Assembly (NCBI GenBank): GCA_002269645.1 | Contig: NIVC01000264.1 | Span: 186,001-250,000, forward strand | From: Macrostomum lignano | Lineage: Eukaryota | Reading direction: 5' to 3' | Length of the DNA stretch: 64,000 nucleotides | In this document: in pieces, positions 16,092 to 19,000 of the stretch | How positions within the stretch are numbered: position 1 is the first letter of the stretch | Layout: every line of letters starts with the position of its first letter | Program-made: the position numbers and the translations under genes | The notes under the pieces: generated by a model | Database searches by the model: none | What the model was told of the DNA's origin: nothing | The model's input: only the letters and a program-made list of their open reading frames with translations

Positions 16092-19000
16092 CTAACCCGA
16101 AGTTGGTGGCTGTGACACTTCGCCACCTCCACCGCCCCTGGGTGCCTCCGCATCCGCTGCCTCCGCCCGCTTCCGCCCGTGACGCCGGCGCCGCTGCCGC
16201 CGCTGCCGCCGCTGCTGTCGTTGCAGTCGTCGAAGACGCCGACGCTCGCGACACTTCTCGTCCTGGCACCGGCGACGGCGCCGGCCTTTCTTCCCGCGAC
16301 CGCGGCGTCGGCCGCTCTTGCGGCCCGGCCTGCCACGGCCGTCGCTGACGCCATCGCCGCTAGGCGAAGCTTCGTCGCTGACGGCCCGCCGCAGGGGGTC
16401 CGTGGATTCGGCAGCGTCGGTGCCGAACAGGCGGAGCTCGTGGCGCGAACTGGCCGCTGCCGCTGGCGACTTGCCGTCCTCGGCCTCGAATAGGACTGGG
16501 CGGCCCTGCTGGGGTGCGGGGTGCCTGTCTCAGTGCCTGTCTCAGTGCCTGTCTCAGTGCCTGTCTCAGTGCCTGTCTCAGTGCCTGTCTCAGTGCCTGT
16601 CCACAGCTGTAGCCCAAGCAAAAATCAGAGCCCACAACAGCTTACCTTGTCCTTCCAGTCCGCCACGCAAGCCGAGTTCAAGGGGGTTCCGTCGGCCCGC
16701 AGCCAGCAAAGTCTTCCGTCAGTGCCCTGGAAATCCAGGGATTTGAGGGATACCGCAATATTTTGTATCGATATCGATTTTCTTGATCAATCGATTGAAA
16801 AATGCAGTCGGCTCACAGGTGCCCCGTCAGTGCCCGGCGGTCCGCGCCGTCCTCGCTTGCCCCTCTCGCCCGGTTCTCCCTGCCGGGTTTAGTTTTTTAT
16901 TAAATAAAAAAAAAGAACGTTCATATTCCTGTAGCCTACTCTCAGTAGAAATATTTGGGTTTTGTAGACAAAATATCAGAATAGTTGAAGAGGAGAAAGT
17001 AACAGACTAACAAATAAGCTCACTTTTGCTCCGGGCAATCCAGGTTGACCCTGAATTTTGAAAGGATGGAGCGTAAAACTTCAGCGGATGAAGCTGACGA
17101 GTTGGGGAAAGTACGAGAGATTAAATTTTACTCAAACCAGTGTAAAAATTATCTCACCTGTTTACCATGAAGACCGGGTCTGCCCTGAAATAAGAGGAAA
17201 TACGCAATTTTTAGCAAAAATCAGTTTAAGCTTAACAGCCGAAAATAACTTGTAAAAAATAGACAATGCTTAAATTGTGATATCCGTGATCTGCTCCAAT
17301 CAAACGTGTGGCCAGTTAAAATGTAAATAATTAGCAAGCGAAAAATATTACTTAATAAATGATGATACTTGGCAGTGATTATGCAACACGCAATTATTTC
17401 TTGTGAAAGCACTGCGATAGCAGAAATTCGAAAAAATGTCTCTTACAGGTAGTCCAACGTGGCCAGGTTCCCCCATGGCACCCTTGAGAGAGTCAGTTAT
17501 GCGATATGACAGTTTAATGAGGATTTTATTGCCCCGAAACTTCGAAGGCTGTGCGAATATCGCGAATTTTATTGCGGCAAGTTTCATAATCTGCTGCAAC
17601 GCTAAGCCGATTATTTTCTAAGAATTTCCAAGCGGGAACGGGCGCTTCTAATGGGGACTGAGAATGGCCCGCTGCTGCCGTGTGGTTTACGATGAGGATC
17701 TGCGCAAATCCGCAACGCACAGCACTGAGGCAGCAAACTTTTCGCTGCTGCCAAGCAGACAGCAGCAGGTGGTAGACATTTCTGCAGCAAGATATCTCTC
17801 TGCACTGAGCAAACACCCCAATTGCAGTTGCAATTTCTGCTGGAAACAGGAGACAGCAGAGACTGTCATACTCGATTTCAGACTCGCTACTAGATAAAGT
17901 CATTATCCTGCAAACTTGGATCGTATAAAGTTCTTTCGCAACTAAAAGCAAAGTCACAGAGCAACTCCTGTCACTGCGTTGTTAACGCAGCTCAAAGCTG
18001 CTACCCTATCACAGCTGGGTGTACTTTAGTCCAGCTTAGTAGCTTTTTTACTTGCGTACTAACCGCGGCCAGCCCGGCTTAACTTGCAGATACCGGGATA
18101 AAATTACTCGGCCGGTGACTTCCAGTCAGACTGGGCTGGTGACCCCCAATTTTACACCCCAACTGGCCTGGTGACCCCCAATTTTACACCCCAACTGGCC
18201 TGGTGACCCCCAATTTTACACCCCAACTGGCCTGGTGACCCCCAATTTTACATCCCAACTGGCCTGGTGACCCCCAACCCTACTGGGCCGGTGACCCCCC
18301 AACCCTACTGGGCCGGTGACCCCCAAACCCTACTGGGCCGGTGACCCCCCAACCCTACTGGGCCGGTGACCCCCCAACCCTACTGGGCCGGTGACCCCCA
18401 ACCCTACTGGGCCGGTGACCCCCAACCCTACTGGGCCGGTGACCCCCAACCCTACTGGGCCGGTGACCCCCAACCCTACTGGGCCGGTGACCCCCAACCC
18501 TACTGGGCCGGTGACCCCCAACCCTAATGGGCTGGTGACCCCCAACCCTAATGGGCCGGTGACCCCCAACCCTACTGGGCCGGTGACCCCCAACCCTACT
18601 GGGCCGGTGACCCCCAACCTTAATGGGCCGGTGACCCCCAACCCTAATGGGCTGGTGACCCCCAACCCTAATGGCCCGGTGACCCCCAACCCTACTGGGC
18701 CGGTGACCCCCAACCCTACTGGCCCGGTGACCCCCAACCCTACTGGGCCGGTGACCCCCAACCCTAATGGGCTGGTGACCCCCAACCCTACTGGGCCGGT
18801 GACCCCCAACCCTAATGGGCTGGTGACCCCCAACCCTACTGGGCCGGTGACCCCCAACTCCACTTAGCCGGAATGAAAGCGAATCCCAAACCTGCGGTTT
18901 CCAGTGGCCCAATCGCGGTTTGCAAAACTCACCTCGAGCCCCGGTCGACCGGGAAAACCCGGTGAGCCGGTGGCACCCATGGCTCCCTTGTCACCTTTGG

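What the first reader, a model, noticed from the sequence alone, without database searches (positions are those of the whole stretch)
16092..16505. MACIT collagen with an extra, protamine-like Arg-rich C-terminal exon
Known MACITs (vertebrate collagens XIII/XXIII/XXV, C. elegans COL-99) end a few residues after the terminal C..GxDG.P...C motif. Here a phase-0 GTAAGC donor follows that motif and splices to a 137-aa last exon. That exon contains [58 protein letters not shown]: 29 Arg + 5 Lys in 58 residues by hand count, with two Cys. In a furin-shed trimer this would display three polycationic tails, a possible heparan-sulfate/glycan-binding or adhesive module (inference).
Basis: partly seen in the sequence, partly recalled or inferred. 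Interest (0 to 1): 0.75.

Follow-up and report, generated by a model that had tools for sequence, protein, structure and literature searches.

The report
Flatworm membrane collagen's long arginine-rich tail
The arginine-rich stretch is a real, transcribed last exon of a transmembrane (MACIT-type) collagen of the flatworm Macrostomum lignano. It is a greatly enlarged version of the short C-terminal extension other invertebrate MACITs already have, and its function is still untested.

Summary
Window 16505-16092 (minus strand) is a 137-codon last exon, joined by a phase-0 GT-AG intron to the 81-nt NC4 exon (16726-16646). It contains 29 Arg + 5 Lys + 2 Cys in 58 residues.

The 18-exon spliced product is identical to GenBank PAA86789.1 (Macrostomum lignano BOX15_Mlig008898g1, "hypothetical protein"). 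That annotation was built from RNA-seq.

A divergent paralog (Mlig000791g1, about 42% identity) has the same NC4 exon, phase-0 intron and tail exon. It keeps the core GRRRRRC-xx-E-x-C-R-x-RRR-x-RRL while synonymous sites are saturated. So this is not a CGG-repeat by-product or a wrong frame.

COL-99 extends 35 residues past the motif and carries an RRKR site. A hookworm MACIT has the same 81-nt NC4 exon followed by a separate 24-aa terminal exon with RRRKR. Insect tails are 45-54 aa and acidic. The exon is therefore an expanded ancestral terminal exon, not an extra one.

Tail layout: acidic disordered spacer, polybasic core with C-x4-C and a predicted 38-residue Arg-rich helix, then a short end.

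Polyanion (heparan-sulfate-type) binding, regulated by furin-type cleavage, is the best guess and is only inferred.

Side result: flatworms have MACITs, although the family was reported lost in Lophotrochozoa.

The parts
34432..34686 (-). Exon 1: start codon, short basic cytosolic N-terminus, transmembrane segment ([19 protein letters not shown]), juxtamembrane Cys cluster and Leu-rich coiled-coil-like stretch
   Evidence: Spliced model equals PAA86789.1. Kyte-Doolittle 19-residue maximum of 1.74 falls here.
30323..30422 (-). Exon 2 (NC1): furin-type site RRLRR, then C-x4-C-P-P-G leading into COL1
   Evidence: Same order as human XIII RRRR...CNCPPG and COL-99 RRVR..CMCPAG.
28413..28438 (-). 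Exon 3: (G)AKGDKGDP
28231..28260 (-). Exon 4: non-collagenous [10 protein letters not shown]
27080..27091 (-). Exon 5: 12-nt microexon encoding exactly RLKR (a furin-type consensus)
26869..26961 (-). Exon 6: non-collagenous [31 protein letters not shown]
24420..24518 (-). Exon 7: 33 aa of Gly-X-Y
22926..22943 (-). Exon 8: 18-nt microexon GPKGSK
20558..20653 (-). Exon 9: NC interruption ([14 protein letters not shown]) plus Gly-X-Y
20160..20231 (-). Exon 10: Gly-X-Y, 24 aa
20006..20086 (-). Exon 11: Gly-X-Y, 27 aa
19104..19148 (-). Exon 12: NC interruption [15 protein letters not shown]
18933..19028 (-). Exon 13: VP plus Gly-X-Y, 30 aa
17158..17184 (-). Exon 14: GRPGLHGKQ
17024..17050 (-). Exon 15: GQPGLPGAK
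16817..16879 (-). Exon 16: [21 protein letters not shown]. Its GKRGRRG resembles the arthropod GKRGRKG found upstream of NC4.
16646..16726 (-). Exon 17, the NC4 exon: 81 nt, phase 0 at both ends, [27 protein letters not shown] (two-Cys MACIT C-terminal motif, divergent)
   Evidence: The Ancylostoma NC4 exon is also 81 nt with an intron at the equivalent place. hhalign against canonical NC4 gives E=2.8e-5, probability 74%.
16506..16645 (-). Intron 17 (140 nt, gtaagc...cagcag). It holds a 12-nt x6.8 tandem repeat at 16521-16601 and ends in a tandem NAGNAG acceptor (cag|cag).
   Evidence: The repeat has two more units in the g2 copy, while the splice sites are unchanged.
16092..16505 (-). Exon 18 (the finding): 137 codons plus TAG, the C-terminal tail
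   Evidence: This is the only frame open in both paralogs.
16341..16505 (-). Tail residues 1-55: acidic spacer (net charge -5), predicted disordered, not alignable with the paralog
16167..16340 (-). Tail residues 56-113: polybasic core, 34 K+R in 58 residues, net +31, seven R-x-[KR]-R motifs
   Evidence: Conserved in the paralog beyond what composition explains.
16251..16268 (-). C-x4-C (CQDEKC), conserved as CKNERC in the paralog
16146..16259 (-). Tail residues 83-120: predicted Arg-rich alpha-helix
   Evidence: AlphaFold2 on the single sequence, pLDDT 95-98 over this stretch
16189..16215 (-). 9-nt x3 tandem repeat encoding QRRQRRQRR. This is the only repeat-derived part of the Arg tract and falls in an alignment gap against the paralog.
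16095..16166 (-). Tail residues 114-137: Ala/Gly-rich end, not conserved; stop codon TAG at 16094-16092

Best explanation
Shown. Window 16505-16092 is the genuine last coding exon of a Macrostomum lignano MACIT-type transmembrane collagen (BOX15_Mlig008898g1, an 18-exon gene spanning 34686-16092 on the minus strand). It is the flatworm counterpart of the separate terminal exon that protostome MACITs carry after the 81-nt NC4 exon, enlarged from about 24-55 residues to 137. It has three parts: a poorly conserved acidic spacer (net charge -5); a conserved polybasic core (net +31) made of a Gly/Arg-rich half, a C-x4-C pair and a predicted ~38-residue Arg-rich helix; and a short unconserved end.

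Inferred. MACITs are type II membrane proteins, so the tail sits at the membrane-distal tip of the collagen trimer and three copies are presented together. Its most likely role is electrostatic: binding a polyanionic partner, such as heparan-sulfate-type glycosaminoglycans or another acidic matrix or cell-surface component. The two cysteines may link or staple the chains. The many R-x-K/R-R motifs make it a probable substrate of furin-type convertases, as already proposed for RRKR648 of COL-99. Cleavage would trim or remove the anchor, so whether the anchor persists would depend on cleavage. The neighbouring acidic spacer may mask the basic core until then.

The confidence value refers to the whole statement including the inferred function. 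The identity part alone (real, transcribed, conserved terminal exon of a MACIT) I put at about 0.95.
For: Identity and splicing:
- The spliced translation is 544/544 identical to PAA86789.1 from its Met, and all introns are GT-AG.
- The GenBank BOX15 annotation derives from genome-guided RNA-seq assembly plus TransDecoder (PMC5730564).
- The near-identical copy g2 (PAA92413.1) has the same junction.

Constraint:
- Paralog Mlig000791g1 has an NC4 exon, a phase-0 intron and a tail exon.
- The Arg frame is the only frame open in both paralogs.
- In the core, 27/42 aligned residues are identical but only 8/42 codons, with dN 0.36 and dS about 2.9.
- The core alignment scores 142 against 85.7 +/- 8.9 for composition-preserving shuffles, 0/2000 reaching it.
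- Both paralogs keep the same charge layout: spacer -5/-5, core +31/+25.

Ancestry of the exon:
- COL-99 has a 35-aa extension with RRKR.
- The Ancylostoma NC4 exon is 81 nt, followed by an intron and a 24-aa last exon with RRRKR.
- Genomic ORFs of arthropods and nematodes read ...K|V or ...D|V (the GT donor) at the same place.

Function:
- Predicted helix with pLDDT 95-98.
- Seven strict furin-type motifs in each tail.
- Tu et al. consider the C-terminal basic site of non-vertebrate MACITs a candidate furin site.
- Heparin binding by mammalian MACIT ectodomains comes from my own knowledge of the literature and was not checked here.
Against: - There are no binding, cleavage, expression or localisation data for this protein.
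- Conservation is shown only between paralogs of one species. The exhaustive protein search found no tail homolog outside M. lignano.
- The recent duplicates differ by 4 nonsynonymous and 1 synonymous change in the tail, which fits neutrality but has no statistical power.
- With this many furin-type sites, the core might never survive secretion.
- Low-complexity Arg tracts align easily, so dN/dS in the core is rough.
- The helix comes from a single-sequence AlphaFold run.
Confidence: 0.45

Rival explanations
1. The tail is only a pro-region. Furin-type convertases remove it (and carboxypeptidases trim it) in the secretory pathway, so the mature collagen ends near NC4 and the polybasic tract is just a redundant cleavage cassette.
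For: Each paralog's tail has seven R-x-[KR]-R motifs. Nematode MACIT tails carry a single RRKR or RRRKR, which Tu et al. interpret as a possible furin site.
Against: One site would be enough for cleavage. Instead, about 47-58 residues of polybasic sequence with a fixed C-x4-C and a flanking pattern are kept while synonymous sites are saturated. Use of the C-terminal site has not been proven even for COL-99.
Confidence: 0.25
2. The tail is structural. The C-x4-C pair forms interchain disulfides and, with the helix, acts as a C-terminal clamp stabilising the trimer, comparable to the C-x4-C at the FACIT COL1/NC1 junction (from my own knowledge).
For: The C-x4-C is conserved in both paralogs. A helix is predicted to start between the two Cys.
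Against: Three +30 helices would repel each other without a polyanion. There is no consistent heptad of hydrophobic residues. The clamp would be separated from the triple helix by NC4 and a 55-67-aa unconserved spacer. MACIT folding is nucleated N-terminally (my own knowledge).
Confidence: 0.1
3. The tail is a neutral, tolerated low-complexity expansion (GC-rich, CGG-type slippage) at a C-terminus under little constraint, with no specific function.
For: A 9-nt x3 repeat encodes QRRQRRQRR and is absent from the paralog. The spacer and end are unalignable. The recent copies show 4 nonsynonymous to 1 synonymous change. Tails differ strongly between phyla.
Against: Arg codons are mixed and differ between paralogs while the residues are kept. 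The core alignment is far above composition shuffles. The same charge architecture is present in both paralogs.
Confidence: 0.12
4. The region is not coding here. The protein ends ...[11 protein letters not shown] by reading into intron 17, and 16505-16092 is 3' UTR or belongs to another gene or frame.
For: Read-through of the donor reaches a stop after 6 codons. All three sense frames are largely open in the window copy.
Against: RNA-seq-derived models of three loci use the splice. Only the Arg frame is open in both paralogs. Conservation is at the amino-acid level. An intron-retaining minor isoform is not excluded.
Confidence: 0.03

Closest known systems
Nematode MACITs (C. elegans COL-99; Ancylostoma, Onchocerca homologs): C-terminal extension with an RRKR/RRRKR cluster
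   Same: Type II transmembrane collagen. An 81-nt NC4 exon is followed by a phase-0 intron and a separate last exon. The extension beyond the Cys...Cys-W motif contains a furin-type basic cluster.
   Different: The nematode extension is 28-35 aa with one basic cluster of 4-5 residues and no Cys pair. Here it is 137 aa with 34 basic residues in 58, a C-x4-C and a predicted long helix. The NC4 motif is divergent (C-C spacing 13 versus 12; W at +4).
Vertebrate collagens XIII, XXIII, XXV
   Same: The domain order is the same: cytosolic N-terminus, TM, coiled coil, furin site, Cys pair, interrupted COL domains, then a two-Cys C-terminal motif.
   Different: The vertebrate proteins stop at CW(N/H/Q)K with no extension.
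Insect MACITs (CG43342/CG42342-type; Apis, Photinus, Homalodisca)
   Same: A separate terminal extension follows ...CGWRPPK, and it is strongly charged.
   Different: The charge has the opposite sign: 45-54 aa with 13-17 Asp/Glu, 3-4 Tyr and only 1-3 basic residues.
Logan protein P0081 (unknown animal, SRR31406938)
   Same: The MACIT NC4 motif is followed directly by a polybasic cluster, RGKKKGRRGKKKNRNRG.
   Different: The cluster is 17 aa, Lys-rich and without Cys, followed (not preceded) by an acidic region. There is no intron between NC4 and the tail.
Proteolytically regulated polybasic matrix-retention tails: EC-SOD (SOD3) C-terminal heparin-binding region, class-3 semaphorin basic tail, PDGF retention motif (functional analogy, from my own knowledge, not tested here)
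   Same: All are C-terminal clusters of Arg/Lys next to a Cys, on secreted oligomers. They bind heparan sulfate and are trimmed by furin-type proteases to release the protein from the matrix.
   Different: There is no sequence relationship. Those clusters are 6-30 residues; here the core is 58 residues on a collagen trimer.
Protamines
   Same: Arginine content is about 50% and a few Cys are present.
   Different: Protamines are nuclear DNA-packaging proteins of sperm. This tail is the lumenal/extracellular end of a membrane collagen, so the resemblance is compositional only.

Membership tests
MACIT (criteria of Tu et al. 2015, PMC4678570) | Predicted type II transmembrane topology (N-terminal cytosolic domain, one TM, no signal peptide) | tested here: met
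   The single strongly hydrophobic segment is [19 protein letters not shown], near residue 29 (KD19 = 1.74). It is preceded by K/R-rich residues, and the collagen domains lie C-terminal to it. This is a hydropathy check only; no dedicated topology predictor was available.
MACIT | Interrupted collagen triple-helix regions in the ectodomain | tested here: met
   Pfam Collagen, E=3.8e-34, 5 stretches. The Gly-X-Y exons are separated by non-collagenous exons 4-6, 9 (part) and 12.
MACIT | Conserved C-terminal motif with two characteristically spaced cysteines | tested here: inconclusive
   The window has G-x-D-x-x-x-C-x4-D-G-x-P-x4-C-x3-W, with C-C spacing 13 instead of 12 and R in place of the canonical G. 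hhalign of the flatworm pair against 19 canonical NC4 sequences gives E=2.8e-5, probability 74%, over 14 columns. phmmer did not reach non-flatworm MACITs. The motif is recognisable but divergent.
MACIT | Juxtamembrane coiled coil, furin-type site and Cys pair just before COL1 | tested here: met
   The order is [16 protein letters not shown], then RRLRR, then C-x4-CPPG and Gly-X-Y. This matches human XIII RRRR...CNCPPG and COL-99 RRVR..CMCPAG. The coiled coil was judged by eye only.
MACIT | Gene structure: 81-nt phase-0 NC4 exon followed by a separate terminal exon (protostomes) | tested here: met
   Window exon 16726-16646 is 81 nt. The Ancylostoma duodenale exon is also 81 nt with an intron at the equivalent place. 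Arthropod and nematode genomic ORFs run into a GT at the same place.
MACIT | Ectodomain shedding by furin and trimer formation | not testable with these tools
   This needs expression with and without a furin inhibitor, as was done for COL-99.
Heparin/heparan-sulfate-binding domains (functional class) | Measured binding to heparin or heparan sulfate | not testable with these tools
   Only the charge density (+31 in 58 aa) and the predicted helix are available.
Protamine / protamine-like proteins | Nuclear, sperm-chromatin protein; homology to protamine families | tested here: not met
   The tail has no Pfam family and no homologs other than M. lignano MACITs among 1.84 billion representatives. 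It lies in the extracellular part of a membrane collagen.

The most novel reading that the evidence does not exclude
The tail is a flatworm innovation built on the ancestral MACIT terminal exon. In this reading it is a disulfide-linked, trivalent polycationic module at the tip of a shed collagen. It anchors the collagen to heparan sulfate or to the animal's own polyanionic secretions, or it is released by convertases as an Arg-rich bioactive peptide. MACITs would then be retained, and even duplicated, in Platyhelminthes, contrary to the published view that the family was lost in Lophotrochozoa.
Probability: 0.2. Interest if true: 0.55.

Novelty: new variant of a known kind. Interest (0 to 1): 0.36.

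Why it matters
- The function of the conserved MACIT C-terminus is unknown. The C-terminal basic site of invertebrate MACITs has never been shown to be used.
- A homolog in which that site has grown into a 58-residue, +31 module, conserved between old paralogs, is an exaggerated natural version of it. Macrostomum lignano already has transgenesis (PMC5730564) and, from my own knowledge, RNAi, so the question can be tested there.
- It also corrects the phylogenetic picture. At least one lophotrochozoan phylum kept MACITs, so the ancestral protostome gene probably already had the 81-nt NC4 exon plus a charged terminal exon.
- Practically, PAA86789.1, PAA92413.1 and PAA89638.1 can be re-annotated from "hypothetical protein" to MACIT-type transmembrane collagen.

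Tried and rejected
- The search for homologous proteins with the spliced C-terminus and with NC4 plus spacer only returned nothing. Even the M. lignano proteins were missing, so that index apparently lacks them. No Logan or transcriptome-derived orthologs were recovered, so cross-species conservation of the tail could not be tested.
- Pfam found no family for the tail or for the paralog fragment.
- GC3 and codon-position GC did not discriminate between frames. Frame choice was settled by comparing stop codons in the two paralogs.
- dN/dS between the recent copies g1 and g2 rests on 5 substitutions and is uninformative.
- The gene identifiers Mlig008898, Mlig000791 and Mlig031885 occur in no searchable paper. 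Searches for MACIT in planarians or flatworms found nothing relevant.
- The look-up of encoding contigs found no record for the Apis protein P0042. The arthropod intron position therefore rests on ORF read-through patterns rather than a mapped gene model.
- Rejected: a collagen-like reading of the 24-nt minisatellite at 18254-18858 (GVTGPVGLG...). It is intronic repeat.
- Rejected: a coiled-coil trimer reading of the Arg helix, because there is no consistent hydrophobic heptad.
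Full report
**1. What is at the coordinates**

The minus strand of 16505-16092 is an open frame of 137 codons plus TAG. It reads [12 protein letters not shown]...[58 protein letters not shown]...PPTSG*.

The upstream exon ends GAC AAG|gtaagc at 16646, in phase 0. The intron is 140 nt and ends ccccagcag|GGC at 16505.

The basic density is not a composition effect:
- There are 34 K+R in 58 residues. Nucleotide shuffles of the exon give a mean of 14.3 and a maximum of 23 in 5000 trials.
- The other two sense frames give 11 and 17.
- Arg codons are mixed: CGG 13, CGC 11, CGT 5, CGA 4, AGG 2.
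- Tandem Repeats Finder reports only a 9-nt x3 repeat (16189-16215, QRRQRRQRR) inside the exon.

**2. Organism and gene**

An exhaustive phmmer search of 1.84 billion representative proteins with the spliced C-terminus gave three real hits, all from Macrostomum lignano:
- PAA92413.1, BOX15_Mlig008898g2 (P0001, 544 aa). Its cluster also holds PAA86789.1 (Mlig008898g1, P0007) and PAA54699.1 (Mlig031885g1, P0006).
- PAA89638.1, Mlig000791g1 (P0002, about 42% identity).
- UniProt A0A1I8FAH0 (P0003).

I mapped P0007 onto the window. Eighteen exons between 34686 and 16092 on the minus strand, all with GT-AG introns, translate to a 544-aa protein identical to PAA86789.1 from its Met.

The GenBank BOX15 annotation was produced from a genome-guided RNA-seq transcriptome (StringTie/TACO plus a de novo assembly, TBONE boundaries, TransDecoder ORFs; Wudarski et al. 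2017, PMC5730564). The exon and its splice are therefore transcript-derived, not ab initio guesses. I could not inspect the reads myself.

**3. Is it a MACIT?**

Tu et al. 2015 (PMC4678570) define the family by type II topology, interrupted collagen domains and the two-Cys C-terminal motif. The window protein has:
- A short basic N-terminus and one hydrophobic segment.
- A Cys cluster and a Leu-rich stretch, then a furin-type RRLRR site.
- C-x4-CPPG leading into COL1. This is the same order as human XIII RRRR...CNCPPG and COL-99 RRVR..CMCPAG.
- Collagen repeats (Pfam E=3.8e-34) broken by non-collagenous exons.
- The ending ...[27 protein letters not shown].

The C-terminal motif is recognisable but divergent. 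It has one extra residue between the cysteines, and W sits four residues after the second Cys. hhalign against 19 canonical NC4 sequences gives E=2.8e-5, probability 74%.

Gene structure adds independent support:
- The NC4 exon is 81 nt in phase 0/0, exactly as in the hookworm Ancylostoma duodenale. There the exon is [27 protein letters not shown]|gtaagt, followed by a 480-nt intron.
- Dozens of arthropod and nematode genomic ORFs run into a GT codon (Val) right after W-x-x-K/D.

I accept MACIT membership, with the sequence motif rated as divergent.

**4.

The claim that known MACITs, including COL-99, stop a few residues after the motif is true only for vertebrates (...CWNK...CWHK...CWQK).

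- Tu et al. state that invertebrate MACITs extend about 30 residues further. [quoted passage not shown]
- COL-99 ends ...CSWKPMGDKNDVWERRKRASLPGAQPGKGAETRPPVTD.
- My profile search recovered more tails:
  - Onchocerca: KPLDSNENGMERAAFRKKRTSNSIPNRIY.
  - Ancylostoma: a separate 24-aa last exon, SEDNTIERSSTAFRRRKRDVATKH.
  - Insects: 45-54 aa, strongly acidic and Tyr-rich (13-17 D/E).
  - An unidentified animal (P0081): RGKKKGRRGKKKNRNRG followed by an acidic stretch.

So a charged terminal exon after NC4 is ancestral in protostomes. The M. lignano exon is its enlarged, polycationic version, not an added exon.

**5. Is the tail under constraint?**

*Recent copies.* The recent duplicate g2 (L002) differs by 5 substitutions in 414 nt, 4 of them nonsynonymous. 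That is too few to interpret. The splice sites are unchanged, and the intronic 12-mer repeat differs by two units.

*Old paralog.* Mlig000791g1 (L001) is informative:
- It lies next to a BAR-domain gene in convergent orientation, as in the window.
- Its NC4 exon ends ...CIASWRAASAK|gtgagc in phase 0. A 259-nt intron follows, then a 142-codon tail exon.
- The Arg-rich frame is the only one of six frames open in both loci.

*Alignment of the two tails*:

| Part | Length (window / paralog) | Net charge (window / paralog) | Conservation |
|---|---|---|---|
| Spacer | 55 / 67 aa | -5 / -5 | Essentially unalignable, dN about 1.07 |
| Polybasic core | 58 / 47 aa | +31 / +25 | Shared GRRRRRC(Q/K)(D/N)E(K/R)CR(E/Q)RRR(L/Q)RRL(Q/E)RQ |
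| C-terminal end | 24 / 28 aa | -3 / +2 | Unconserved |

In the core, 27 of 42 aligned residues are identical but only 8 codons are. dN is 0.36 and dS about 2.9, which is saturated. The core alignment score of 142 exceeds all 2000 composition-preserving shuffles, which average 85.7 +/- 8.9.

The core is therefore kept at the protein level. Only the QRRQRRQRR piece looks like recent slippage, and it falls in a gap against the paralog. Caveats: low-complexity alignment inflates identity, and all this evidence comes from one species.

**6. Structure and motifs**

A single-sequence AlphaFold2 run predicts disorder for the spacer and for the Gly/Arg-rich first half of the core. It predicts one long helix for tail residues 83-120 ([38 protein letters not shown]) with pLDDT 95-98. 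The two Cys (tail residues 80 and 85) bracket the helix start. Each paralog's tail has seven strict R-x-[KR]-R motifs. No Pfam family matches the tail.

**7. How it most likely works**

*Shown:* this is a transcribed, conserved C-terminal module of a membrane collagen.

*Inferred:* in a type II collagen the C-terminus is the membrane-distal tip, so a trimer displays three +31 segments. This would hold whether the trimer is membrane-bound or shed at RRLRR or RLKR. Across protostomes the terminal exon varies in sequence and even in charge sign, but it stays highly charged. That argues for an electrostatic role rather than a specific fold.

I favour polyanion binding (heparan-sulfate-type GAGs or another acidic partner), regulated by furin-type cleavage within the core, with confidence about 0.4-0.45. 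The conserved adjacent acidic patch ([13 protein letters not shown] / DNDNDDDSRD) could mask the core. From my own knowledge, and not tested here, the closest functional analogies are the furin-trimmed heparin-binding C-terminus of EC-SOD, the basic tail of class-3 semaphorins and the PDGF retention motif.

Rivals:
- A pure pro-region removed before secretion (0.25).
- A neutral low-complexity expansion (0.12).
- A disulfide/helix clamp for the trimer (0.10).
- Not coding (0.03).

**8. Novelty**

The exon is already in GenBank inside proteins annotated as hypothetical. Nothing in the searchable literature mentions these genes or a flatworm MACIT. Tu et al. inferred loss of MACITs in Lophotrochozoa. 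M. lignano has at least two diverged MACIT loci, which corrects that view for Platyhelminthes.

The tail is a new variant (longest and most basic) of a known but uncharacterised feature. Interest is moderate: the structural claim is solid, the premise of uniqueness was overstated, and the function is open.

Noticed in passing
window 34686-16092 (-): A MACIT-type collagen exists in a flatworm, with at least two diverged loci in M. lignano (Mlig008898/031885 and Mlig000791). Tu et al. 2015 reported MACITs as not identified, and inferred as lost, in Lophotrochozoa.
   Followed up: partly
window 27080-27091 (-): A 12-nt microexon encodes exactly RLKR, a furin-type consensus, flanked by tttcag and gtatgc. 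Its inclusion or skipping could add or remove a cleavage site in the ectodomain. A second microexon of 18 nt (22926-22943) encodes GPKGSK.
   Followed up: no
window 17447-17482 (-): An unannotated 36-nt Gly-X-Y block ([12 protein letters not shown]) has an AG acceptor and a GTAAGA donor, in phase 0. It is absent from PAA86789.1 and PAA92413.1 and may be an alternative cassette exon.
   Followed up: no
window 16505-16510 (-): A tandem NAGNAG acceptor (cag|cag) precedes the tail exon. Using the upstream AG would insert one Gln in frame.
   Followed up: no
window 18254-18858, 19193-19998, 16521-16601, 15941-16036, 28409-29687, 30921-33232 and others: Introns and flanks are packed with mini- and microsatellites. 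Some translate into false collagen-like Gly-X-Y strings (GVTGPVGLG..., GEEGRRGGQ...). The 12-mer array in intron 17 differs by two units from the g2 copy.
   Followed up: partly
window 11373-12837 (+) and L001 13569-18134: A BAR-domain gene lies tail-to-tail with the MACIT gene in both the window and the paralogous locus. The conserved synteny indicates an old segmental or whole-genome duplication.
   Followed up: partly
P0006 (PAA54699.1, Mlig031885g1) and P0003 (UniProt A0A1I8FAH0): Two other database models of this gene family read out of frame near the 3' end. P0006 ends ...[33 protein letters not shown], before NC4. P0003 has shifted segments relative to L001. These look like assembly indels or mis-splicing, not real isoforms.
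   Followed up: no
L003 248-565 (Logan SRR31406938): An unidentified animal has a canonical MACIT NC4 motif followed, without an intron, by RGKKKGRRGKKKNRNRG and then an acidic tail. This may be a second lineage with a polybasic MACIT extension.
   Followed up: partly
window 39376-42310 (-) and 52833-53405 (+): Neighbouring genes are an RRM protein with a long Pro/Gln/His-rich tail (hnRNP R/Q-like by eye) and a CCCH plus RING zinc-finger protein (RNF113/CWC24-like by eye).
   Followed up: partly
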